In this document: positions 13,125 through 57,600 of the stretch, in pieces
How positions within the stretch are numbered: the stretch's first letter is position 1
Layout: every line of letters begins with the position of its first letter
From: Macrostomum lignano
Lineage: Eukaryota
Assembly: GCA_002269645.1 (NCBI GenBank)
Contig: NIVC01000365.1
Coordinates: forward strand, 186,001 to 250,000
DNA length: 64,000 bases
Reading direction: 5' to 3'
Notes under the pieces: model-generated
What the model was told of the DNA's origin: nothing
Databases searched by the model: none
The model's input: the letters and a program-made list of their open reading frames with translations, nothing else
Translations under genes and position numbers: made by a program

Positions 13125-13135
13125 AAACCGATTTG

Positions 13136-13530
13136 AAAACTCGCTGGTTGCCTACCGTTAGTAGAGTAAAGAGGACACAGAATTATTTAATTTGAGAACT
13201 CGCTTGCTGCCTACTGTTAGTAGAGTGATGAAGAGGACATGGAATTATTTAACTTGAAAACTCGCTGGTTGCCTACTGTTAGTAGAGTGATGAAGAGGAC
13301 ATGGAATTATTTAATTTAAAAACTCGCTGGTTGCCTACTGTTAGTAGAGTGATAAAGAGGACATGGAATTATTTAATTTAAAAACTCGCTGGTTGCCTAT
13401 TGATAGTAGAGTGAGGAGGATGCGGAATTATTTTATTTAAAAACTCACTGGTTGCCTACTGATAGTAGGGTGAAGAGGATGCGGAATTATTTAATTTAAA
13501 GACTCACGGGTTGCCTACTGATAGTAGGGT
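13136..13530. repeat. ~60-nt tandem repeat in the NHE 3' UTR, ~7 copies
   Basis: AACTCGCTGGTTGCCTACTGTTAGTAGAGTGA..GAGGACATGGAATTATTTAATTT is repeated directly after the stop codon. Confidence 0.9.
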
Positions 13531-13995
13531 AAAAAAGAGTTTTCACATCTTTTAAAAATTACGTTTTTTGATTTAATTTTTTTGCTTTCAGCTTTCGAGT
13601 GTATTCAGTATATATACATATATTAAATATTAATATGATTATGACATTCTTCACTTGCCAATCATTTGCTCGAATGCTTAATTACGATTCAATGAGCAAT
13701 GAGCCGGCTCTACTAAATTTGTCTGGTAATTTTTTTCCTTTGCTCTTTTTGCAAGCAAATTGCTTCCCTATTGCAGTTTTTTACGTTTAATTTCTTTGCC
13801 TTTCGACTTTGGAATCTGTTTACTCTGATAGGCTAAATCAGCGCTGTACATGTTGGACTGCCCGCTCTCACTAATCTAGTCTGTGCTGATTCATACCAAC
13901 CTTTTTCATCAAATCTCCAACGGCATCTCATGCTGTCCACTGGCGCGATTTTGTTTCTGATAGCTGTGGGCGTAATCTATTATTATGCTTGTATT

Positions 13996-14710
<715 letters not shown>

Positions 14711-15371
14711 GCTAGCTAGCAAGTCTCTGCTAGCAAGTCTTCAGTCGGCATTATGGAAGCAGTTTGCCGGCTTACTCAAGCTTGGACTCGCAGTTACACA
14801 GATCTTATCGCTTCCTTGTATTTTGAGTTTTTGGCCAGTCCATCACTGCGTAAGCCTTCATTGCTCAGCTCAGTATAATTAATTCTCTTCTATCTATTTA
14901 TATTCGAAGTATATTTTTATCCCGAGTTTTCATTTATTCGAACTGGTTTATCGCAGCTTATATCTGTCCGAATAGTTGATTGATAGAAATTGAAAAATTT
15001 CAATAATAATAATAATAATAATAATAATGACACCGAACTTCGGTTTGTCCTGTTAACCGATATTATACGGGACGGGAAATTGTTAGTTATCGATTATTAG
15101 AGCTGGATCGCTGACTTTATTGCTTAATTTTCTGTTTTTAATAAGAACCAGACTAATGTTTTTAGTTAGCTCATGTTGAGTAGGTTTTGGTTGTCAAGAT
15201 AGCAAACTGCTGTAATTGAATAAGTAGAGACTTGTAACTTAGTCTTCGGAACTTCCGATAGTGCATTTGTACTTTACAAAGTTAACCTGCACGAAAATTA
15301 CTAATAGATGTTTGAACTTTTTATAAGATAATTTTTGCATTAAAAATGTTTTCTATCGTAAGATTTTTCCA

Positions 15372-15517
15372 CTACGAGAGTACTTCTTAAGGGCGCGAGT
15401 ACTTTCGAAGTACGCGAGTACTTTTTAAGTGCGCGCCTACTTTCAAGTGCGCGAGTACTTTTTAAGTGCGCGCATACTTTCAAGTGTGCGAGTAATTTTT
15501 AAGTACGCGAGTACTTT
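15372..15517. repeat. ~19-nt CG-rich repeat GCGCGAGTACTTTTTAAGT upstream of the periphilin-like gene
   Basis: ~7 degenerate copies. Confidence 0.8.
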
Positions 15518-15633
15518 TGTTTAATGCACACAAACTTAAGAGAAGCAGCTTATAATAACGGTATCAGTGTACTTTTATTGATTGCTGCAAACCACCCCAT
15601 GCCCGTGCCAGAGGCAGCCAGCAGCCATTGGCC

Positions 15634-17199
15634 ATGAACGACGCCGTAGACCCGGCGCTGGTCGCGCCGTCCCGTCACTGCCTGTACATCCGGGGCCTGC
15701 CGTCGCGCATCAAAGCCGACGAAGTTCGTCGCTACTTTATCGACAAAGAGGCCGACTGTTCCATCGATTTTTTCTCCTACACGGGCAGCCAGGCTGCGCT
15801 GAACATCGCCCTGCGATTCGATTCTCACGAAGTTGCCAAGCAGATCATGCGCCGGTACAATGAGTCCGGCCTGCTCGGCTGCAAAGTCAGCATAGTCTGG
15901 TTCAAGGACATGATCCGCGCCCGGCAGCGCGTCCGGGCCGACCCGCAGCTGAGGGCTCGAGTTCAGCGGGCGCAGGAGGGCCGCGGACTATCCGGTTCCC
16001 GGTCGCCGCCGCCCGCGCCTGGCTGGCGATTCGGACAGCAGGTGCGCGCCGACTCCAGCTTGGGGCCTCAGCCACCCTTGCCTCTTGTATTGTCTCACCT
16101 GTCTCTGCCTGTCCCTCACCTGTCTTTTGCCTGTCCCTCACCTGTCTCTTGCCTGTCCCTCACCTGTCTCTTGCCTGTCCCTCACCTGTCTCTTGCCTGT
16201 CCCTCACCTGTCTCTTGCCTGTCCCTCACCTGTCTCTTGCCTGTCCCTCACCTGTCTTTTGCCTGTCCCTTGCCTGTCCCTTGCCTATTCCTTGCCTGTC
16301 TTTTGCCTGTCCCTCACCTGTCTCTTGCCTATCTCTCCCCTGTCCTTCACTCGTCTCTCACCTGTTCCTCATTTTCCTTATAATACAATTGAGCAGTGAC
16401 CTCAGTCCCTCCCTGTTGTCATTCTCCTATCTACAGCTGCACTACACGCGCCCACTGCAAAGTAATCCAGTGCCTCGTGTACCTCTATCCAACAAGACTC
16501 TCACATGCCTTCCGATCCCCCTCACCCGCTAAGCAGAACCGCAGTCGGTCTGGCAGCCAGCGCCGCCGCAGTCGCAGCCGCAGCCCGACCAGCCGCAGCC
16601 GCAGCCCCAGCAGGAGCAGCAGCACTCGAAGCGCCGCCTGTCGGGGCCCGCGCAGCCCGCCAGAGGAGGACGAGGAAGCCGCGGCGACGTCAGCATCAGC
16701 GGCAAACAACGGCATCGACAATTCGAATGGCGGCGTCGAGACCCGGCGGCTGGGACCGAGGTCCCCGCCATCGCCGCCGCCCGTGTCTTCTCCGCCGCCT
16801 CCGCCTCCACCGCCGCCGCCGCCGCCAACAACATCGGCTCGGCCTTCGACATCGTCCTTGGCAACGCCGCTTCAGCCGCCGTCGTTGCCGCAGATGTCGC
16901 AGCCGCCGTTTTGCGACGCCGACAATCACGGCGTTAGCGCCGATGCCGGCGACGGCATCCTGCGTCTGGTGCGCGCCAAGAAGGCCGAATTGGAGCGAGC
17001 CTACAGGCAGGACTGCGACACCTTCGCTGTGGTGGCCAAAGTGCTGGTTAGCAAGAATTCCAGCTTGGAAGGCCCGGTGCGCGACGCTCTGCGCGAAGCT
17101 CTGCGCGACATTGGGCAGCACTGCGTGGAGGAGTTGCGCGAGTTCGCCCGCACTCTGGCCATCGCTCAGCAGCAGCGCCAGCCGGCTGGCCAGCGATGA
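15634..17199 (+). CDS. PPHLN1: RRM + RS-rich + periphilin C-terminal-domain protein (~356 aa)
   Basis: Exon 1 15634-16041 contains RRM-like LYIRGLP...LRFDSHEVAKQIMRRYN..LLGCKVSIVW. Exon 2 is 16534/16537-17199 (NAGNAG acceptor) with SRSRS repeats, polyPro and KKAELERAYRQDCDTFAVVAKVLVSKNSSLEGPVRDALREALRDIGQHCVEELREF. This matches the periphilin C-terminus as I recall it (EIEQVYRQDCETFGMVVKMLIEKDPSLE...LHEIGERCVEELKHF). Confidence 0.85.
16097..16370. repeat. 22-nt minisatellite CCTGTCCCTCACCTGTCTCTTG in the periphilin intron
   Basis: Direct tandem copies. Confidence 0.9.
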
Positions 17200-18127
17200 C
17201 CTTGGCCGGAGTCCTTCCGTTATCTAAAATGCGATTATGTCATTTGTGACTAAATTTATCAAGTTTTATCAGCAATACCCTGATATTTCTACTGACTCAG
17301 TAGTCAACTGAGGATTTTTTGTCGGTTTTTTCGTAGTTTTTTTCTGTACAGCTCGGCTAATTACAATCAAGATTCATTCGTTTTTACATAATTTTGTAAC
17401 CCGCCTAAAGCTAGCGGCCACAGAAGCACTTGCTGGCCTTTTTAACATCGGCAGTTTTTACTACTCAACTTGTCAACCTGTCGTTATTTGTGTTTCTATA
17501 GCTCTGTTTCATTCATATTCATTGCCCGAGTCCGAAAAACTGTGACAGCTGTGACCTGAATTCAAATCGGTGCGAGTTCATTCCAGCTACTGTTAGTAGC
17601 ATGGGCTTGAAATTCTACATTCCCATCGTTATTAGGTGACATCACGCACTAATGACCCACCCAATCACCCCCCCCCCTAATATCCGACCCAATCATCCAC
17701 TCCAAACCCACCCATTGACCCACTAATAATCCACCCAATGACCCACTGATAACCCACCCAATGACCCACTAATAACCCACCCAATGACCCACTAATTACC
17801 CAGCCAATCATTCCACTCAAAACCCACCCAATGACCCACCTAATGACCCAACCGCAACCCTGATTTGTAAAAAATTTCCAATTTTTTGCATATAAACAAT
17901 AATGAATCATTATCGTTGTTAATCTTTCGCGATAAAAATAATGAATTCTGTTGTATCTCCATACTGTTTTTGTTTTGCTGTGTGATGTTTTTCTGATTTT
18001 GCTTTTTTTAGTACAATGCTTCTTATTCCTGCGTGTTGTTTTCTCTGCCAAGGTGCGCGCATATTGCTTGATTCTCGGGCCTCAGCGGCTCCTCAGCACA
18101 AGGCAACGCTTAATAAATTAAGCGTTG

Positions 18128-18520
18128 ACACCCATCTCTGACTCCCATCTCTGACACCCATCTCTGACACCCATCTCTGACACCCATCTCTGACACCCAT
18201 CTCTGACACCCATCTCTGACTCCCATCTCTGACTCCCATCTCTGACACCCGTACCCAACCCTCAGCTCAAGCAGCAGTGACAAACACCCGTGCCTAAAAT
18301 TCCTGTTTCCAATCTGTTTCACTCATTCACTCATTCACTCATTCACTCATTCATTCACTCATTCACTCATTCACTCATTCACCCACTCATTCACCCATTT
18401 ACTCATTCGCTCATTCACTCATTCACTCATTCACCCATTCACCCATTCACTCATTCACCCATTCACTCATTCACTCATTCACTCATTCACCCATTTACTC
18501 ATTCACTCATTCGCTCATTC
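18128..18520. repeat. 13-nt ACCCATCTCTGAC array (18128-18250) and (ATTCACTC)n array (18318-18520)
   Basis: Direct observation. Confidence 0.9.
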
Positions 18521-19164
18521 ACGGTGCTGGCTGCGGCCCGAAGCCAGCTCAGTGGCCGGCAGAGAATTTTCATATCTAACAATAATTCCTGATCCTAAGC
18601 GTTGTTGAATTAATAATGCCAAAAATTTTATCGTCTACAATTTTTTTATTATACTACTGACAAGCCACTGTTGTGCCAATAGTCAGTGAATTGAAACTGT
18701 TGTTTTATAATCAAACTTAACTTTTATAGTGTTCTGTACTTTCGTTGTTACATTCTTAGAGTGTCGCTATTAGTGTAGATATTAGCTGCCTGAGCTGAGC
18801 CCGTCTTGCACTGTTTCAAAAATCGTTTTTTGCTGGTTTTTCTGTTTTTGCTCTTCTTTTGTCTGGTTTTTTCCGGACACGCCTGTACGAGTTTTTCGTG
18901 TTACTGCTGTTTTTGGTACTTCAAATCATATTTAACCGCATTGGCAATTGAATTAGTTTTTGTGTGACAGCAGTATCTTGACTATTAAACTGTTTCATTT
19001 TAAACTTGCCTCCAAGTTCTTCAGTTTGAGGCTTTTTTTGGTGTAAAATGTTTGTTTGGCTTCTTTGTTGCTGGGTTGGTTGCTAGGCTAGCAACTATGT
19101 TGCTCGGATGGTTGTTAGTCTCACTTGTATATCTTGTATTTTAGCTTATCTTTTGTATCTAAAG

Positions 19165-19830: not shown

Positions 19831-19899
19831 TAAACTATAATTTTGTTTCTACTCCATTTTACTCCAATCGTTCCGTTGTTATGCCGTTGTTATGCGCAG

Positions 19900-22317
19900 G
19901 CAATTCTAGCGCTGCTGCACGAGCTCAGGGACGCCTACAGCAATGTAGTGGCATTTGTCAGGGAGCTGGCGGTGCAGCTGGCCATGCTGCAGGCCGAGGA
20001 GAAGCGGGCCAAGCGAATCCTGGCCGTTGGAGGCCTCCTGCTGATCAGCGTGTGCCTGCTGACTGTGTGGGGCCACCTGAACCCGAGCATGACCCTGGGC
20101 GCCTTCACCTGCCTGCTGCTGTTTGACCTGTGCTACATCGGCGTCGCCCTGGTCAGCCTCTGGGTTGAGCGGCGCCAGCGCTGTCTGGCCTACACGTTCG
20201 GCTACGAGCGATTCGAAGTGCTGGCGGTGTTCGCCTCCCTGATGCTGGCCATCCTCGGCGTGTTCTTCGTGCTGAAGGAGTGCGTGGAGCGGGCCTTCGA
20301 ACCGCCCGATGTCACGCCTAGCGGCCTGGCGCTTGGCGGCCTCGTTGGACTCGTGGTGCATCTAGTGGCTGTGTACAGGTGTGTGGGTTTCTGTTTGTGG
20401 CTGTGTACAGGTGTGTGGGTTTCTGTTTGTGGCTGTGTACAGGTGTGTGGGTTTCTGTTTGTGGCTGTGTACAAGTGTGTGGGTTTCTGTTTGTGGCTGT
20501 GTACAGGTGTGTGGGTTTCTGTTTGTGGCTGTGTACAGGTGTGTGGGTTTCTGTTTGTGGCTGTGTACAGGTGTGTGGGTTTCTGTTTGTGGCTGTGTAC
20601 AGGTGTGTGGGTTTCTGTTTGTGGCTGTGTACAGGTGTGTGGGTTTCTGTTTGTGGCTGTGTACAGGTGTGTGGGTTTCTGTTTGTGGCTGTGTACAGGT
20701 GTGTGGGTTTCTGTTTGTGGCTGTGTACAGGTGTGTGGGTTTCTGTTTGTGGCTGTGTACAGGTGTGTGGGTTTCTGTTTGTGGCTGTGTACAGGTGTGT
20801 GGGTTTCTGTTTGTGGCTGTGTACAGGTGTGTGGGTTTCTGTTCGTGGCTGTGTACAGGTGTGTGGATTTCTGTTTGTGGCTGTGTACAGGTGTGTGGGT
20901 TTCTGTTTGTGGCTGTGTACAAGGCTGTAACAGTTGCGTATACCTTCACAGCCGCAGATTCCATTTATTGCCCAACCGTTCCCCCCCCCCACTCCAGCGT
21001 GGAGAACCCGGCCTACAATCACGTGATCGACGCCAGCACGTCCAGCTGGCTGCAGGAGCACGTGACTGACATCAGCGAGAGCCTGTGCCATCACGTGCCG
21101 GGCCTGAGCAAGCTGCTGCTGCCCAGGCTGAACCCCCTGGCCCTGCTGGGGGTGTCCTCGGCCATGTGCCTGTTCCTGGCCAGCTGCCTACTCGACGCCT
21201 ACCAGTCCTCGCTGGCCGACATCACAATGGCCGTACTGGCCGCCTTCGTTGTCGTGGTGACCATGGCGCCAATGGCCGCCTACTGCGGCAAGATTCTGCT
21301 GCAGAGCACCCCGGCTCACCTGGTCGGCCAGCTGGACAAGGCGCTCGGCGAGGCCGCCACGCTTGACGGGGTGCTGGAGCTTCGCAAGGAGCGCACCTGG
21401 CTGACCGGCTTCGGACAGCTCAACGGCTGCCTGCAGGTGAGGCCTATTTGATGTATTCTGTGTAGTTTATTCATGACTGTGTACAGGTCTGTGTACTCTA
21501 TTCGTGTCTGTGTACAGGTCTGTGTACTCTATTCGCGTCTGTGTACAGATCTGTGTACTCTATTCGCGTCTGTGTACAGATCTGTGTACTCTATTCGCGT
21601 CTGTGTACAGATCTGTGTACTCTATTCGTGTCTGTGTACAGGTCTGTGTACTCTATTCGCGTCTGTGTACAGATCTGTGTACTCTATTCGTGTCTGTGTA
21701 CAGGTCTGTGTACTCTATTCATGTCTGTGTACAGATAGGTACAGTGTATCCGATTAGTGACTGTCATTTTTTCAGAAAACTTTGGCCATTTTGAAGCCCC
21801 AAATTGCCATTTTTCGCCTGTTTTCTGTTCGTAAAAATCTGCAAAAGCAGAGTAAATTCTAATCCCAACGTCCCAGGTTCGAGTCCGCCGCGACGCCTCC
21901 GAACAGCTTGTGCTGGCCCACGTGACCAACCGGCTGGCCCACCTGGTGCCCGGCCTCACAGTGCAGGTCTACAAAGATGACTGGAGCCGCGGCCTGCAGC
22001 CCTCCGCCAGCTGGGTGGCGCCCCGCTTCAACCCGTTCGCCCCGCCCGCCGCCCCATCCGCAGCCGCCGCCTCCCACGCCGTCGCCCCAGCCTCCTCGGC
22101 TTCTTCATTTCTCGCCGGTTCTTCATCACCACATCCGTCAGCAGCGTCGACCGCGGTGTCCGAGGCCAACCTGCCGGACCTGCTGCTGCCCGCCAGCTTC
22201 GCTCCGCCGAACCCCTTCACCAGCCACGCCGGGGTCAGCTTCATGCTGCCGCCGCCCCCGCCGCCTCCGCCGATGCCTCCGTCGACATCCAGTTCGACGT
22301 TTCATCAGCGCTACTGA
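19900..22317 (+). CDS. SLC30A6: Zinc transporter ZnT6 (cation diffusion facilitator); start codon not located
   Basis: Exons 19900-20378, 20998-21436, 21877-22317 (1359 nt, in frame). Motifs: YTFGYERFEVLAVFAS, ASTSSWLQEHV, KILLQSTPAHLVGQLDK, TLDGVLE, VRRDASEQLVLAHVTNRL, TVQVYKDDW; all typical of ZnT6. Confidence 0.93.
20367..20925. repeat. 32-nt minisatellite GTGGCTGTGTACAGGTGTGTGGGTTTCTGTTT spanning the ZnT6 exon 1 donor
   Basis: ~17 copies; the first copy straddles the exon/intron junction at 20378/20379. Confidence 0.95.
21476..21735. repeat. 31-nt minisatellite CTGTGTACAGATCTGTGTACTCTATTCGCGT in ZnT6 intron 2
   Basis: Period 31 (21477, 21508). Confidence 0.92.
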
Positions 22318-22701: not shown

Positions 22702-25700
22702 ATGGCAACGCCAGTCGCCCTACCAACGGACCTGGCCAATTGGCCCAAGCTGAAGCGCCACCTGGAGGCCCTGAAGCGAATCGAGCCGAACCCTGAAGCG
22801 CTGGTGAAAGTGCTGGACGACCTGCACGAGGAGTACATGCTGAACTACGTCAGCCCGGCCACGGGCGCCGGTTCCGCGCGCTCGTTTTTCACTGGACTGC
22901 GCCGGTTCATTGAGCAGCGCATGAGCGATGAGCAGCGCAAGCAGTTCTTCCAGGGCCTGCTGCCCTTCCTGGTGGACCGCGTGCTGGCCTTGGAGGCTGG
23001 CAGGGAGCCCCTGAACTACGCCTGCCAGCAGGAGGGTGAGATGCTCTCTGCTCTGTGTGTGGTACAGCCTGTGCTTACAGCCTGTTTACAGACTGCACAG
23101 TGTGTTACAGCCTGTGCTTACAGACTGGACAGTGTGTTACAGCCTGTGCTTACAGCCTGTTTACAGACTGGACAGTGTGTTACAGCCTGTGCTTACAGAC
23201 TGGACAGTGTGTTACAGCCTTTGCTTACAGACTGGACAGTGTGTTACAGCCTGTGCTTACAGACTGGACAGTGTGTTACAGCCTTTGCTTACAGACTGGA
23301 CAGTGTGTTACAGCCTGTGCTTACAGACTGGACAGTGTGTTACAGCCTGAATACTGTACAGAGTATACCAGTCTAACAGTTAAATAATCCCAATCAAAAT
23401 CCCTAGCCTCGGTCACTGTGCTAAGTCGCGAGTTCGTATCCTCGCTATTGTCGGCCGCGTTCCTCTGCGTGATGCCGCAGCACCCCAAGGACCTGGCCAT
23501 CAGCATGTCGGCCAACGGCTTTCCCGCCTTCTTCGCCGCCATTCAGGAAGCGTGAGCGATTTTTCACAGTATTTTCTAGTGTATTACTATAAGTAGAGCA
23601 GTGAAGGATTTGCTGCTAATAATTTCTGCTGCAGGACTCCGCACCAAGCAGAGAAGCTGCAATGCGTTCTCAGCTACTTCGAACGGCTGCAGCGGGAGGG
23701 CCTGCCCGCCGGCAAGCTGGTTGTCGCCCGCTCCGTCTTGCCGTCCAAGGAGCTGCTGACCTCCGCCAAGCTGGCCGCCAGCTCCCGCCCGCTCTGCCGC
23801 TTGCTGGTGGAGCCCGAGGCCTCCATGAAGGACGCCGACACCAACCTGCTGCACGTCTGCTTTGGCAACAGCTTCCTGGGCGGCGGGGTGCTCTTGACTG
23901 GCGTGTTGCAGGTGCGTCTTCTGCTTCTCATCCCTCCCATCTCATCCCCTCCCATCTCATTCCCTCCCATCTCATTCCCTCCCATCTCATTCCCTCCCAT
24001 CTCATCCCCTCCCATCTCATCCCCTCCCATCTCATTCCCTCCCATCCCATCCCCTCCCATCTCATTCCCTCCCATCTCATCCCCTCCCATCTCATTCCCT
24101 CCCATCTCATTCCCTCCCATCTCATCCCCTCCCATCTCATCCCCTCCCATCTCATCGCCTCCCATCTCATCCTCTCCCATCTCATCCCCTCCCATCTCAT
24201 CCCCTCCCATCTCATCCCCTCCCATCTCATCGCCTCCCATCTCATCCCCTCCCATCTCATCGCCTCCCATCTCATCCCCTCCCATCTCATCCCTTCCCAT
24301 CTCATCCCCTCCCATCTCATCCCCTCCCATCTCATCCCCTCCCATCTCATCCCCTCCCATCTCATCCCCTCCCATCTCATCCCCTCCCATCTCATCCCCT
24401 CCCATCTCATTCCCTCCCATCTCATTCCCTTCCATCTCATCCCCTTCCATCTCATCCCCTCCCATCTCATCCCCTCCCATCTCATTCCCTCCCATCTCAT
24501 TCCCTCCCATCTCATCCCCTCCCATCTCATCCCCTTCCATCTCATCCCCTTCCATCTCATCCCCTCCCATCTCATCCCCTCCCATCTCATCCCCTCCCAT
24601 CTCATCCCCTCCCATCTCATCCCCTCCCATCTCATCCCCTCCCATCTCATCCCCTCCCATCTCATCCCCTCCCATCTCATCCCTCCCATCTCTTTCTCAA
24701 TTCACCCCTTCTCCCCATCTCTCCCGTACTCTGACTCTCCCATCTTACTAAAAGTAGTCAGTTCATGGTTAAACCCAGCCCTGCCGCCAACCCCACCCCA
24801 GGAGGAGACCCTGTTCGTGCACAACCCGGAGCTCATCACCTCCATGCTGTTTGTGGAGGCCATGGACAACAACGAGGCCGTGTACATCATGGGCTACGAG
24901 CCGTTCAGCCAGTCCGACGGCTACGGGCTGAAAATGAAATTCACCGGGCAGGTGCGCGAATCGCTCCAGCCGGACGAAGCCGGCATTCTGCCGCGCCGCC
25001 TCGTCTCCATGGACGCCGTGCCGTACCGCGGCTTCCCCGCTGAGCAGTACGTTAAGCAGAACCTGCTGCGCGACACCAACAAGGCTTATGTGGCATTTCG
25101 GCAGTCTTATAAACAGGTGAGAGTTTTGGCCTTTATAATGAACCCGCTTGCTCATTATATACGATATCCCACACCCCATGTACATATGCCTCTCCCCCAC
25201 CCCATGTACATATGCCTCTCCCCCACCCCATGTACATATGCCTCTCCCCCACCCCATGTACATATGCCTCTCCCCCACCCCATGTACGTATGCCTCTCCC
25301 CCACCCCATGTACGTATGCCTCTCCCCCACCCCATGTACATATGCCTCTCCCACCCCATGTACATATGCCTCTCCCCCACCCCATGTACGTATGCCTCTC
25401 CCACCCCATGTACGTATGCCTCTCCCACCCCATGTACGTATGCCTCTCCCACCCCATGTACATATGCCTCTCCCACCCCATGTACATATGCCTCTCCCAC
25501 CCCATGTACATATGCCTCTCCCACCCCATGTACGTATGCCTCTCCCACCCCATGTACATATGACTCTCCCACCCCATGTACGTATGTATGCCTATTCTCA
25601 CCCAGTGCACATTTGCCCTACATATCGATTAAATTGCGGCATGCCTCAATGAGACTGAGCCTGTCCTCATGGCGTTGAATGACTGGCTTTACAAACAATT

Positions 25701-54600: not shown

Positions 54601-57600
54601 CAGGGATTTCTCAGGGCAGATTCAGGATGACTCCCCAGGATTCAAGCTTGAAACTCAATCTGTCAGTTGCCAACGACTGACAGCCGCAGGCGAGTTCAGC
54701 TCACGTGTCAGACTCCTTCCAGTGCTGCAGGGAGCTGCGCAGCTCGCCAAACACGGTGATGCCCAGCTTCCGTTTCAAATCGTTGGCGTGCCGGATCTTG
54801 GACGACAGCACCTGGCGGAGCGTCTGGATCTCCTCCTCTGTCTGCAGGCAAGCGAGAGGGTGGGAATAGCAGTGAGGATACCGGGCATTAACTATGCAGA
54901 TTTGGCTCTTTGTGACTACCTGGATACATTCCAGTTATCCTCTATGACCAAATATGGAGAATTCATACCTTTCCATAACACACTGAGGAAAATTCATACC
55001 CTCCATAACACACTGGGGAGAATTCATACCCTCCATAACACACTGAGGAGAATTCATACCCTCCATAACACACTGGGGAGAATTAATACCCTCCATAACA
55101 CACTGAGGAGAATTCACACCCTCCATAACTGTAGTGTACGCCCCCTCTATGCCTTCACGCTTTTCTCTGACTAGCTTTCGCCCTCTTGTCCAACGTGCAC
55201 TAGCACTGGCCCCGTCAACCGTTGCGTAACACTGTAGCCGCACGTCGGCAGTGAGTTGATATAATAGCTCAAATATACGGTCCACGAGACCAGGTTTTTC
55301 GCCACACACAAGCGCACTACAATGGCGTCGCAAGCTAGCCTACCCACACCGCCCCCATTGAACTTGCGCGAGGAGCCCCATGCGGCACATACAAAGTGGA
55401 GCAAGTGGTTGGCTCAGTTCCAGCTGTTCGCCGCGGCCGCTGACATCTCTGATAAGAAGCGACTTCGCCAACTCCTTCTATATACAGCGGGCGAGGACCT
55501 ACAGGCCATTGCAGCCGGTCTCGCCGAAACCGGTGATGACGTCGACAAGCTCATTAAGGCTCTCAATGAGCACTTCATCAGCCAGCTCAACTTGCCCTTC
55601 ACACGCTACCAGTTCCGTCGGTGCATCCAGCAGACCGGAGAGTCCCTGGAAGACTGGCTGCGGCGGCTCAACGACACCGCGGACTGCTGTAAGTTCGAAG
55701 GCCTCAGGGACTCTCTGATCCGCGACCAGCTGATTGCCGGCTGCAACTCCGAGCAGCTCCGCAGGAAGCTGCTGGCCATGGACAACGTGGACCTGGGCCA
55801 GGCGGTCCGGGTGGCCAGGGCCATGGAGGCAGCGGAGTCGCAGGCCAGCCTCATGGAGACCAGCGCAGCGACCGTGCAACGGCTGCGGAAGCGCGAGTTC
55901 AGCCCGCCAGAGCAGCCGCAGAGATCAGCCACGCAGGCAGCCGATCGCACGCAGCCAAAGTGCATCCGCTGCGGCAACTTCGGCCACCGCAGCTGTAGCG
56001 CAGCGGTAGGCAAGACCTGCAACCGATGCGGCAAGCCGAATCACCTCGCCAAGGCCTGCCTGTCCCGGCCAGAGGACGTGCGAGCCCTGCGGGTCGGCAG
56101 CGACAGTTCAGGCGCAGAGGACGAGGTCTTCTGCCTGACCGTGATGGCCTCCGACACGAACGCGGCAGCAGCCCTTGCCACGGTGCTGGTAGAAGCGACT
56201 CCAGTGCAGGTGCTGGTGGACAGCGGAGCCGACTGTAACATCCTCACCGAGGAAGCCTGGCGAAAGCTCCCGGGACCCCCAGGCCTGCAGCCGACGACAA
56301 AGAGGATCTTTTCATTTCGATCAGAGAGACCTCTGCGCACTCTGGGAGTCTGCAGCCTGCAGGTCTCGGTCGGCCGGAGGGTCCAACGCGTCAGCTTCAT
56401 CATCGTCCCCGGGAGCGGCACCAGTGTGCTCGGCCGTGCAACCTCGACATCCCTGCAGCTGCTGAGTCTAGAGACGCAGGCCCAGGCACCGGCCAGAGAG
56501 GCGACAAGGCCGATCGATGCTCTAAACGACGAGCCACCAGCCCAGGACGGAGTACTGCTGCAGCAGCTCAACACCGTCAAGTCTGCACCGGAGGACCCGA
56601 CCATCGAGAGCGTCCGCGAGGCCACCGCGCGGGACCCGGCTCTGAACTTCGTCATGCAGGCGCTGGCGATTGGCAACTGGCGCTCCGGCGCTACAGCCCA
56701 GGCCGACAGCTTCCACTCGCTCAAGGGAGAGCTCCGGGTGCGTGACGGTGTGCTGCTCAGGGACAGCAGGATCGTTGTACCCGCAGCGCTTCAGCAGCAG
56801 ACCATCAGTTGGGCCCACCAGAACCGATTCGGCTGGAGGAAGTCCATCGACCCGCTGCGGAGGAAATTCTGGTGGCCCGGCATGGCGCGGCAGGCACAGA
56901 CGGCTCTGTCAAAGAGACGCCAGAACGAGGACATCCGAAGCGGTGGCCCGTGCAAGGCGCTTCCGGACGGCCGACAGAGGACGGCAGACACAGCAGGGAA
57001 GTCGGACGTTCAACAGCTGTCGGAGCTCGACTGGAAGCTGGTGACAAGACGGCGCAAGCCGCTGCTTTCAAGCTGCTGCCAGGTGACCGAAGCTGTACGA
57101 CGGCCTCTGGGAGGTCTACCGGCTGCACGACAGCACGTCAGCAAACCACGAGGTCGTAGCAACACAGCCGCAACCTACTAACTCGATGAATTATACATGT
57201 ACATGCATGCGTAAATTTAGCCTAATTGCAGACTGACACAACTTTTCCGAAATTTCGTTCCGCTAATCTAATTATAGGCTTTGTACTTTTTTGGTTGGAG
57301 GAGAGATGTAGTGTACGCCCCCTCTATGCCTTCACGCTTTTCTCTGACTAGCTTTCGCCCTCTTGTCCAACGTGCACTAGCACTGGCCCCGTCAACCGTT
57401 GCGTAACACTGTAGCCGCACGTCGGCAGTGAGTTGATATAATAGCTCAAACATACGGTCCACGAGACCAGGTTTTTCGCCACACACAAGCGCACTACAAT
57501 AACACACTGAGGAGAATTCATACCCTCCATAACACACTGGGGAGAATTAATACCCTCCATAACACACTGAGGAGAATTCATACCCTCCATAACACACTGG

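What the first reader, a model, noticed from the sequence alone, without database searches (positions are those of the whole stretch)
15634..17199. HUSH-type periphilin domain fused to an RRM and RS region in an invertebrate
Seen: an N-terminal RRM with a good RNP2 (LYIRGL) but non-aromatic RNP1, an SR-like stretch, and a C-terminal helix pair matching the periphilin YRQDC.TF...L..IG..CVEEL signature. Established: vertebrate periphilin binds TASOR through this C-terminal domain and binds RNA via a disordered N-terminus within the HUSH retroelement-silencing complex; as far as I know it has no RRM. Inference: this is a variant or ancestral HUSH-like subunit with a folded RNA-recognition module, of interest in a genome full of TEs and hypermutated relics.
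Basis: partly seen in the sequence, partly recalled or inferred. Interest (0 to 1): 0.7.

Follow-up and report, generated by a model that had tools for sequence, protein, structure and literature searches.

The report
Flatworm periphilin with ancestral RRM domain
This is the Macrostomum lignano copy of periphilin, and its extra N-terminal RNA-recognition domain is real but is the usual invertebrate form of the protein rather than a peculiarity of this genome; apparently no paper has described this form.

Summary
A two-exon gene (15634-16041 and 16537-17199, + strand, phase-0 GT..AG intron) encodes 356 aa. The order is a divergent RRM, a 32-aa RS stretch, a Pro/Ser-rich disordered linker, and a Periphilin_C helical hairpin (Pfam 80 bits; 48% identical to human periphilin in PDB 6SWG). 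The window is Macrostomum lignano, and the NCBI model BOX15_Mlig022724g1 has the same splice.

The RRM misses the Pfam cut-off here. It is confirmed by AlphaFold (pLDDT 90), by Foldseek (all top-50 hits are RRMs) and by a family profile that hits solved RRMs (nucleolin 1e-11).

The fusion is not a local variant. Forty-four protein clusters carry the same N-RRM and C-Periphilin_C order. They come from flatworms, annelids, nematodes (C. elegans Y57G11C.9), a nematomorph, echinoderms, hemichordates and amphioxus. This points to an ancestral bilaterian architecture that vertebrates lost.

The human dimer-interface and TASOR-contact residues are conserved, so a TASOR-like partner is plausible. HUSH membership could not be tested because no TASOR or MPP8 search of this genome was possible. 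I found no paper describing RRM-periphilin, although databases auto-annotate both domains.

Interest is moderate.

The parts
15599..15637 (+). Short upstream ORF (MPVPEAASSHWP*). Its stop overlaps the main ATG (ATGA). It matters only if the transcript starts upstream of 15599.
   Evidence: Read from the sequence. No conservation or expression test was done.
15634..16041 (+). Exon 1, codons 1-136. It holds the N-terminal extension, the RRM and the start of the linker.
   Evidence: The ATG is at 15634 and the in-frame stop upstream is at 15556. The donor GT is at 16042. The exon end is the same as in NCBI model P0001 on L003/L004.
15652..15981 (+). Extended RRM, residues 7-116. It comprises the conserved 'VPxS+H' lead-in, beta1 16-23 (RNP2 LYIRGL), alpha1 28-37, beta2 42-49, beta3 55-62 (RNP1 position, ALNIALRF), alpha2 65-75, beta4 86-89, then the conserved 'WF(K/R)D' motif and a C-terminal helix 93-116.
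   Evidence: AlphaFold2 gave pLDDT 90.3 and pTM 0.76 for the domain and >90 for this region in the full-length model. All top-50 Foldseek PDB hits are RRMs, with TM 0.6-0.73. The family profile hits solved RRMs: nucleolin 1.1e-11, PABP 2.7e-11, La 3.5e-7. Orthologues pass the Pfam RRM_1 cut-off. The window protein itself scores only 12-15 bits.
16042..16536 (+). Intron of 495 nt, GT..AG, phase 0. A second in-frame AG at 16532-16533 would add one Gln. The intron contains a 22-bp tandem array of 12.4 copies at 16094-16365.
   Evidence: The intron is 452 nt in the Mlig_3_7 copies L003/L004.
16537..17199 (+). Exon 2, codons 137-356 plus the TGA stop.
   Evidence: It has the same 663-nt length as the second exon of P0001.
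16537..16632 (+). RS stretch, residues 137-168 (NRSRSGSQRRRSRSRSPTSRSRSPSRSSSTRS).
   Evidence: 78% R+S and 15 RS/SR dipeptides. AlphaFold pLDDT is below 50, meaning disordered.
16633..16938 (+). Pro/Ser/Ala-rich disordered linker, residues 169-270, with a 12-residue proline run at 222-233 (nt 16792-16827). The whole linker, 117-270, has no tyrosine.
   Evidence: Composition. pLDDT is mostly below 50. The three amino-acid differences from the Mlig_3_7 copies (171, 205, 229) all fall here.
16939..17178 (+). Periphilin C-terminal domain, residues 271-350. It is a hairpin of two long helices (271-309 and 311-350). L306, L313 and V317 align with the human dimer-interface residues L326, L333 and I337. 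L336 aligns with the human TASOR-contact residue L356.
   Evidence: Pfam PF25234 gives E=1.4e-22. PDB 6SWG_A gives E=3e-14 with 29 of 61 residues identical. Foldseek to 6SWG_B gives TM 0.92 and rmsd 0.5 A over 69 columns. pLDDT is 96-98. The residue mapping is, with the roles of the human residues taken from PMC7544229.

Best explanation
This gene is a Macrostomum lignano orthologue of periphilin, one of two paralogues, in what appears to be the ancestral bilaterian form.

Shown here:
- A folded but RNP1-degenerate RRM with conserved N- and C-terminal extensions.
- An RS-rich and proline-rich disordered linker.
- A C-terminal helical hairpin that superposes on human periphilin.

Inferred mechanism:
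- The hairpin homodimerises and each hairpin accepts a helix from a TASOR-like scaffold, as in PDB 6SWG.
- The RRM and the basic RS region hold the complex on nascent RNA.
- The protein would therefore act as the RNA-binding adaptor of a co-transcriptional chromatin or RNA-surveillance complex.
- In vertebrates the RRM was lost, and RNA binding and self-association passed to the Arg/Tyr-rich disordered N-terminal domain.

My confidence that it is a periphilin-family protein with a true RRM is about 0.95. My confidence in the TASOR-docking, HUSH-like silencing role is about 0.45. The figure given is a blend of the two.
For: Identity:
- Pfam Periphilin_C scores 80 bits, and 6SWG gives E=3e-14.
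- The Foldseek match to 6SWG_B has TM 0.92 and rmsd 0.5 A.
- L306, L313, V317 and L336 align with human L326, L333, I337 and L356. Mutating those human residues abolishes TASOR binding and impairs silencing (PMC7544229).

RRM:
- The AlphaFold models are confident.
- All top Foldseek hits are RRMs.
- The family profile hits solved RRMs.
- Orthologues pass the Pfam RRM_1 cut-off: C. elegans 35 bits, Clonorchis 26, Branchiostoma 25.5.

One gene rather than two:
- NCBI model P0001 has the same splice.
- Forty-four cluster representatives show the same N-RRM and C-Periphilin_C order, across seven phyla.

Constraint:
- Window against the Mlig_3_7 copies shows 6 synonymous and 3 non-synonymous changes, and all three non-synonymous changes are in the linker.
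- Against the paralogue, RRM omega is about 0.3 and linker omega about 0.66.

Partner plausibility: TASOR-like proteins are reported in invertebrates (PMC10578480).
Against: - No TASOR, MPP8, MORC2 or SETDB1 search of M. lignano could be run, so the partner is unverified.
- The literature describes HUSH as conserved 'from fish to mammals' (PMC11295320).
- Nematodes keep this protein, and I found no report of HUSH in nematodes.
- The RRM has lost two of the three canonical RNA-stacking aromatic residues in both Macrostomum paralogues. RNP1 position 3 is Asn. Position 5 is Ala and is invariant across the family.
- The linker has no tyrosine, so the Arg/Tyr self-association shown for the human N-terminal domain cannot apply as such.
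- RNA binding was not measured.
Confidence: 0.55

Rival explanations
1. The protein is a HUSH-independent nuclear RNA-processing factor. In this reading it is an SR-like RNA-binding protein involved in splicing, export or surveillance. The Periphilin_C hairpin would serve only as a dimerisation or coiled-coil docking module for some partner other than TASOR. The HUSH role would then be a vertebrate innovation built on an older RNA-processing protein.
For: - The RRM plus RS arrangement resembles splicing regulators. NCBI auto-names several orthologues 'serine/arginine repetitive matrix protein 1-like'.
- The family is retained in nematodes, including C. elegans Y57G11C.9. That gene appears only in omics lists, and none of the papers retrieved links it to silencing.
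- Papers describe HUSH as a vertebrate system.
Against: - The residues that contact TASOR and form the dimer in the human complex are conserved, and the C-domain is 48% identical to the human one across more than 550 million years.
- TASOR-like proteins exist in invertebrates.
- The RS stretch is only 32 aa, shorter than in classical SR proteins.
Confidence: 0.35
2. The N-terminal domain is a pseudo-RRM used for protein-protein contact rather than RNA binding. The beta-sheet face would be covered by the conserved C-terminal helix (93-116) or by a partner. Any RNA contact would come from the basic RS region. This reading is compatible with either role above.
For: - RNP1 positions 3 and 5 are Asn and Ala in both Macrostomum paralogues. 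Ala59 is invariant in 31 of 31 family members.
- The window protein fails the Pfam RRM_1 cut-off.
- A conserved 'WF(K/R)D.RR' helix follows beta4.
- Six of the 94 N-terminal profile hits scanned also match Pfam 'RRM_occluded'.
Against: - The RNP2 aromatic residue (Y18) and the surface basic residues R20 and R61 are nearly invariant.
- Most family members outside the flatworms keep Phe at RNP1 position 3 ('LFVAVRF').
- The closest structural matches are RNA-binding RRMs such as Pes4, U1A, TIAR and HuR.
- I could not inspect model coordinates to see where the C-terminal helix packs.
Confidence: 0.25
3. The two exons belong to separate genes or to a mis-joined model, and no RRM-periphilin fusion protein is made from this locus.
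For: No RNA-seq was available to me. The exon-1 reading frame continues for 114 more codons into the intron repeat (ORF 15628-16383).
Against: - The intron is a clean phase-0 GT..AG intron.
- The NCBI model for the same gene in another assembly has the identical junction.
- The same domain order is found in the paralogue and in 44 clusters from seven phyla.
- The read-through into the intron is low-complexity tandem repeat.
Confidence: 0.03

Closest known systems
Human periphilin-1 (PPHLN1), HUSH subunit; PDB 6SWG; Pfam PF25234 Periphilin_C
   Same: - The C-terminal helical hairpin matches: 29 of 61 residues identical, TM 0.92, rmsd 0.5 A.
- The dimer-interface and TASOR-contact leucines are conserved.
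- A long disordered Ser/Arg-rich region precedes the hairpin.

   Different: - The flatworm protein starts with a folded RRM. The human N-terminal region is described as largely disordered, and HUSH is said to lack classical RRMs (PMC7544229).
- The flatworm linker has no tyrosine, so it lacks the Arg/Tyr pattern needed for human N-terminal domain function.
- Binding to TASOR is untested.
Uncharacterised invertebrate RRM-periphilins: C. elegans Y57G11C.9 (Q9U203), Branchiostoma floridae XP_035675850, Patiria miniata 'Periphilin', Ptychodera flava 'periphilin-1-like', Owenia, Dimorphilus, Clonorchis, Opisthorchis and Gordionus proteins
   Same: They have the same architecture: an N-terminal RRM with 'VPxS+H' and 'WF(K/R)D' extensions, a Ser/Arg-rich linker, and Periphilin_C at the C-terminus. 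Matches to the N-terminal profile give E-values from 8e-34 to 1e-13.
   Different: - The Macrostomum copies are short (356 and 332 aa, against about 500-650 aa).
- They have Asn rather than Phe at RNP1 position 3.
- They keep a C-domain closer to the human one (49% identical) than the nematode or trematode copies do (30-40%).
- None of these proteins has a published function that I could find.
Classical SR / SR-like splicing proteins (RRM plus RS domain)
   Same: An N-terminal RRM followed by an Arg/Ser dipeptide-rich disordered region.
   Different: - The RS stretch is only 32 aa.
- The RRM is RNP1-degenerate.
- The protein ends in a Periphilin_C hairpin, which SR proteins lack.
- The N-terminal profile search returned members of its own family first and only generic RRM proteins at weak E-values.

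Membership tests
Periphilin family (Pfam PF25234 Periphilin_C) | The C-terminal domain scores above the Pfam gathering threshold. | tested here: met
   80.2 bits against a cut-off of 27, E=1.4e-22, residues 279-341. The precomputed PF25234 hit is also recorded on the database copy P0001.
Periphilin family (Pfam PF25234 Periphilin_C) | A helical-hairpin fold that superposes on solved periphilin (6SWG). | tested here: met
   AlphaFold predicts helices 271-309 and 311-350 with pLDDT 96-98. Foldseek to 6SWG_B gives TM 0.92, rmsd 0.5 A and 42% identity. The structure is predicted, not solved.
Periphilin family (Pfam PF25234 Periphilin_C) | The hydrophobic dimer-interface residues (human L326, L333, I337) and the TASOR-contact residue (human L356) are conserved. 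| tested here: met
   The aligned residues are L306, L313, V317 and L336. The roles of the human residues are from PMC7544229.
Periphilin family (Pfam PF25234 Periphilin_C) | A disordered Arg/Tyr-rich N-terminal domain that self-associates, as in the human protein. | tested here: not met
   The linker, residues 117-270, is disordered. Its composition is 22% Pro, 21% Ser and 13% Arg, with no tyrosine. A folded RRM occupies the N-terminus instead.
HUSH complex subunit | Physical binding of the C-terminal domain to TASOR with 2:1 stoichiometry. | not testable with these tools
   This needs a TASOR-like sequence from M. lignano plus a multimer prediction or a pull-down. Neither was available.
HUSH complex subunit | TASOR and MPP8 orthologues are present in the same genome. 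| not tested
The other collections do not hold M. lignano. The literature says only that TASOR-like proteins exist in invertebrates (PMC10578480), and flatworms are not mentioned in the text.
HUSH complex subunit | The protein is required for H3K9me3 deposition and silencing of intronless or retroelement transcripts. | not testable with these tools
   This can only be tested experimentally.
RNA recognition motif (Pfam PF00076 RRM_1) | The score exceeds the Pfam gathering threshold. | tested here: not met
   The window protein scores 12.1 bits as the whole protein and 14.7 bits as exon 1, against a cut-off of 20.7. Orthologues with the homologous domain do pass: C. elegans 35.0, Clonorchis 26.1, Branchiostoma 25.5, Amphiura 21.2, Owenia 21.0.
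RNA recognition motif (Pfam PF00076 RRM_1) | A beta-alpha-beta-beta-alpha-beta fold. | tested here: met
   DSSP on the models gives E16-23, H28-37, E42-49, E55-62, H65-75, E86-89. All top-50 Foldseek hits are RRMs. The family profile hits solved RRMs by sequence, best E=1.1e-11.
RNA recognition motif (Pfam PF00076 RRM_1) | Canonical RNP2 and RNP1 aromatic residues are present on beta1 and beta3. | tested here: inconclusive
   The RNP2 aromatic residue is present (Y18). RNP1 position 3 is Asn57, where most of the family has Phe. RNP1 position 5 is Ala59, which is invariant in the family. RNA binding could therefore be non-canonical or lost.
Classical SR proteins | One or two N-terminal RRMs followed by a C-terminal RS domain of at least about 50 residues with a high RS content. 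This definition is from my own knowledge of the Manley and Krainer nomenclature. | tested here: not met
   The RS stretch is 32 residues and internal, and the C-terminus is Periphilin_C.

The most novel reading that the evidence does not exclude
Periphilin began as a true RRM protein. On this reading, an RNA-guided, TASOR/periphilin-type silencing module that reads nascent transcripts through a folded RRM predates vertebrates and still operates in flatworms, nematodes, annelids, echinoderms and amphioxus. Vertebrate HUSH would be a derived version in which the RRM was replaced by an Arg/Tyr-rich disordered domain. That would give HUSH research a structured RNA-recognition module to dissect and genetically tractable invertebrate models, such as C. 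elegans Y57G11C.9 and M. lignano RNAi.
Probability: 0.3. Interest if true: 0.7.

Novelty: new variant of a known kind. Interest (0 to 1): 0.45.

Why it matters
How HUSH picks its RNA targets is an open question. The published view is that the complex has no classical RNA-recognition motif and that periphilin binds RNA through a disordered domain. Periphilin outside vertebrates regularly carries a conserved folded RRM. This suggests that RNA recognition was originally domain-based. It also dates the periphilin module to at least the bilaterian ancestor. It points to tractable organisms, C. elegans and Macrostomum, in which the ancestral function can be tested.

For this particular locus the result is more modest. 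It is an intact, constrained and already catalogued gene of a known family, and it is not special to this genome.

Tried and rejected
1. A word-indexed homology search with exon 1 alone found nothing. The exhaustive profile search was needed to find the family.
2. A word-indexed search with a concatenated RRM plus C-domain alignment returned only 5 proteins. It gave no denominator of Periphilin_C proteins that lack an RRM, so I cannot say how many invertebrate periphilins lack the RRM, nor prove that no vertebrate has it. None of the 42 RRM-bearing C-domains that matched the human segment is more than 65% identical to it. This argues against vertebrate members but does not prove their absence.
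3. I recalled a Pfam Lge1 relationship from older Pfam releases. No Lge1 hit appeared at E<=10, and no paper links the two, so I dropped it.
4. I considered an xRRM (La/LARP7-type) reading because of the C-terminal helix and the invariant Arg on beta3. RNP2 is intact, and no xRRM appears among the top-50 Foldseek hits. La RRM1 does appear in the sequence-profile hits. I did not pursue this.
5. The idea of two separate genes or intron retention was rejected.
6. Ten literature searches for any description of RRM-periphilin, invertebrate HUSH or Y57G11C.9 function found nothing relevant. The library lacks most subscription journals, so this absence is not proof.
7. The paralogue's introns lie at different positions: after codon 73 inside the RRM, and at codon 197 in phase 2. 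Intron position therefore gives no extra support for the splice.
Full report
**What is in the window.**
The + strand at 15634-17199 carries a two-exon gene. Exon 1 runs from the ATG at 15634 to 16041, and the nearest in-frame upstream stop is at 15556. A 495-nt phase-0 GT..AG intron (16042-16536) follows, and exon 2 is 16537-17199, ending in TGA. The exons are 64% and 69% G+C in a 48% G+C window. The spliced product is 356 aa. The intron holds a 22-bp tandem array of 12.4 copies at 16094-16365. That array is why the exon-1 frame stays open for 114 further low-complexity codons.

**Source organism and gene model.**
The protein is 99% identical over its full length to NCBI 'hypothetical protein BOX15_Mlig022724g1, partial [Macrostomum lignano]' (P0001). 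That model sits on two contigs of assembly GCA_002269645.1. Exact chaining of P0001 onto those contigs shows the same donor (GTGCGC), the same acceptor (AAGCAG) and the same 663-nt second exon that I derived from the window.

The window is about 97% identical in DNA to those contigs. Within the CDS there are 6 synonymous and 3 non-synonymous differences. All three amino-acid changes (171, 205, 229) fall in the disordered linker.

A paralogue, P0002 (332 aa), lies at a different locus and has the same domain order but different intron positions. Against it, the RRM has omega of about 0.3 and the linker about 0.66, with dS saturated.

**The C-terminal domain is periphilin.**
- Pfam Periphilin_C (PF25234) matches residues 279-341 with E=1.4e-22, 80.2 bits against a cut-off of 27.
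- The only significant solved-structure match by sequence is human periphilin-1 in the TASOR-periphilin core complex, 6SWG, with E=3e-14. Identity is 29 of 61 residues.
- AlphaFold2 with a 36-sequence alignment predicts two long helices (271-309 and 311-350) at pLDDT 96-98. This hairpin superposes on 6SWG chain B with TM 0.92 and rmsd 0.5 A.
- Prigozhin et al. (PMC7544229) showed that human L326, L333 and I337 form the dimer interface and L356 contacts TASOR. Mutating them abolishes TASOR pull-down and impairs silencing. A unique register places these four residues on the human segment of the alignment. The aligned flatworm residues are L306, L313, V317 and L336.

**The N-terminal domain is a real but divergent RRM.**
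- Pfam RRM_1 scores only 12-15 bits for the window protein against a cut-off of 20.7. A word-indexed search with exon 1 found nothing.
- A three-sequence profile of the N-terminus (two Macrostomum paralogues plus a sea-star protein) was searched exhaustively against 1.84 billion representatives. It found 94 proteins at E<=1e-3 and 59 at E<=1e-10.
- Of those 94, 54 match Pfam RRM_1 and 40 match Periphilin_C.
- Orthologues pass the RRM_1 cut-off outright: C. elegans 35.0 bits, Clonorchis 26.1, Branchiostoma 25.5, Amphiura 21.2, Owenia 21.0.
- A 31-sequence family profile hits solved RRMs by sequence: nucleolin 1.1e-11, PABP 2.7e-11, La 3.5e-7, FUS, Prp24, HuR and hnRNP A1.
- The domain model has pLDDT 90.3 and pTM 0.76, with the order beta-alpha-beta-beta-alpha-beta followed by a C-terminal helix at 93-116. 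All top-50 Foldseek PDB hits are RRMs, with target TM of 0.6-0.73.

**Details of the RRM surface.**
RNP2 is intact (L17-Y18-I19-R20-G21-L22). At the RNP1 position (A55...F62), the two aromatic sites are Asn57 and Ala59.

Across the family, Ala59, Phe62 and Ala68 are invariant. Ser13, His15, Arg20, Gly21, Phe35, Phe46 and Arg61 are more than 90% conserved. Most non-flatworm members have Phe at RNP1 position 3 ('LFVAVRF'). A 'VPxS+H' lead-in and a 'WF(K/R)D.RR' motif after beta4 are family signatures.

RNA binding is therefore plausible, but it may be non-canonical, and it is weakest on sequence grounds in Macrostomum itself.

**The linker.**
Residues 137-168 are an RS stretch with 78% R+S and 15 RS/SR dipeptides. 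Residues 222-233 are a proline run. The whole 117-270 linker is 22% Pro, 21% Ser and 13% Arg, and it has no tyrosine. It is predicted to be disordered. It is too short to meet the classical SR-protein definition. It also lacks the Arg/Tyr pattern that the human periphilin N-terminal domain needs.

**The fusion is the invertebrate norm.**
Using my own HMMs for both domains on the retrieved proteins, 44 cluster representatives (50% identity clusters) carry the RRM first and Periphilin_C last. Named members are:
- Platyhelminthes: Macrostomum (two paralogues), Clonorchis, Opisthorchis, Calicophoron, Dibothriocephalus.
- Annelida: Dimorphilus, Owenia.
- Nematoda: C. elegans Y57G11C.9/Q9U203, C. 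bovis, Pristionchus, Angiostrongylus, Bursaphelenchus, Thelazia, Steinernema, Panagrolaimus.
- Nematomorpha: Gordionus.
- Echinodermata: Acanthaster, Patiria, Asterias, Amphiura.
- Hemichordata: Saccoglossus, Ptychodera.
- Cephalochordata: Branchiostoma.

UniProt already labels several of these 'RRM domain-containing protein' or 'Periphilin-1 C-terminal domain-containing protein'.

None of the RRM-bearing C-domains is more than 65% identical to the human one. I saw no arthropod, mollusc, cnidarian or vertebrate among the 30 clusters I could name. This distribution spans protostomes and deuterostomes. The simplest reading is that the bilaterian ancestor had RRM-periphilin and the vertebrate lineage lost the RRM. 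I could not obtain a full census of Periphilin_C proteins, so the timing of that loss remains open.

**Literature.**
[quoted passage not shown] HUSH is described as conserved from fish to mammals (PMC11295320). TASOR-like proteins (DUF3715-SPOC-DomI) are reported in invertebrates (PMC10578480). Ten searches found no paper that describes an RRM in invertebrate periphilins or a function for Y57G11C.9. The library is incomplete, so this is absence of evidence only.

**Mechanism.**
Shown here: an RRM fold, a disordered RS/Pro linker, and a periphilin hairpin with conserved interface residues, all under purifying selection.

Inferred: the hairpin dimerises and binds two helices of a TASOR-like scaffold, and the RRM and RS region tether the complex to nascent RNA. 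The main rival is a HUSH-independent RNA-processing role, with the hairpin docking to another partner. A compatible variant is that the RRM is a protein-binding pseudo-RRM.

**Verdict.**
The 'ancestral' option is the supported one. The locus itself is an ordinary, intact, already catalogued member of the periphilin family. The wider point has moderate interest for HUSH biology: periphilin outside vertebrates carries a conserved RRM, and this seems not to have been discussed in print.

Noticed in passing
window 23662-25563 (+), and L001/L002 about 12.5-15.1 kb: An ORF with a PARG catalytic-domain hit (PF05028, E=3e-26) lies about 6.5 kb downstream of the periphilin gene. The paralogous periphilin locus (P0002) also has a PARG gene about 3.5 kb downstream. 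The periphilin-PARG neighbourhood was therefore duplicated as a block, by segmental or whole-genome duplication. The flanking genes differ otherwise: Na/H exchanger and Cation_efflux here, Vma12 at the paralogue.
   Followed up: partly
window 13131-18522: There is an unusual density of tandem arrays around the gene:
- 62 bp x6.5 at 13131-13527
- (TCTG)n x179 at 13996-14710
- a 19/37-bp array at 15378-15518, just upstream of the ATG
- 22 bp x12.4 inside the intron at 16094-16365
- a 23-bp array at 17651-17850
- 13 bp x9.6 at 18126-18250
- 8 bp x26.6 at 18318-18522
   Followed up: no
window 15599-15637: A 12-codon upstream ORF has a stop codon that overlaps the main start codon (ATGA). It could affect translation if the 5' UTR extends that far. 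The NCBI partial model begins at the position equivalent to 15604.
   Followed up: no
window 55322-57181 (+): A 619-aa ORF has weak PNMA/gag-like, aspartyl-protease and integrase zinc-binding hits. It is part of an LTR-retroelement-derived sequence. I did not analyse it further or assemble it.
   Followed up: no
window 19843-21069 (+): An ORF has a Cation_efflux (PF01545) hit, E=1.9e-15. It matches the 449-450-aa cation-efflux gene annotated downstream of periphilin in L003/L004.
   Followed up: partly
protein P0079 (566 aa), residues 419-509: A database protein carries a degenerate copy of the Macrostomum-type N-terminus ('DPALVTPSRHCIYIRGL...CSIDFFTYT') embedded far from its own N-terminus. 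The RRM core looks disrupted. It may be a decayed third copy or a chimeric gene model.
   Followed up: no
Clonorchis sinensis proteins P0005 and P0110: Trematodes also seem to have two RRM-periphilin paralogues. One keeps Phe at RNP1 position 3 ('LFVAIRF') and the other has Ser ('FSVAIRF'). Duplication followed by relaxation of the RNP1 site may therefore be a recurring theme in flatworms.
   Followed up: no
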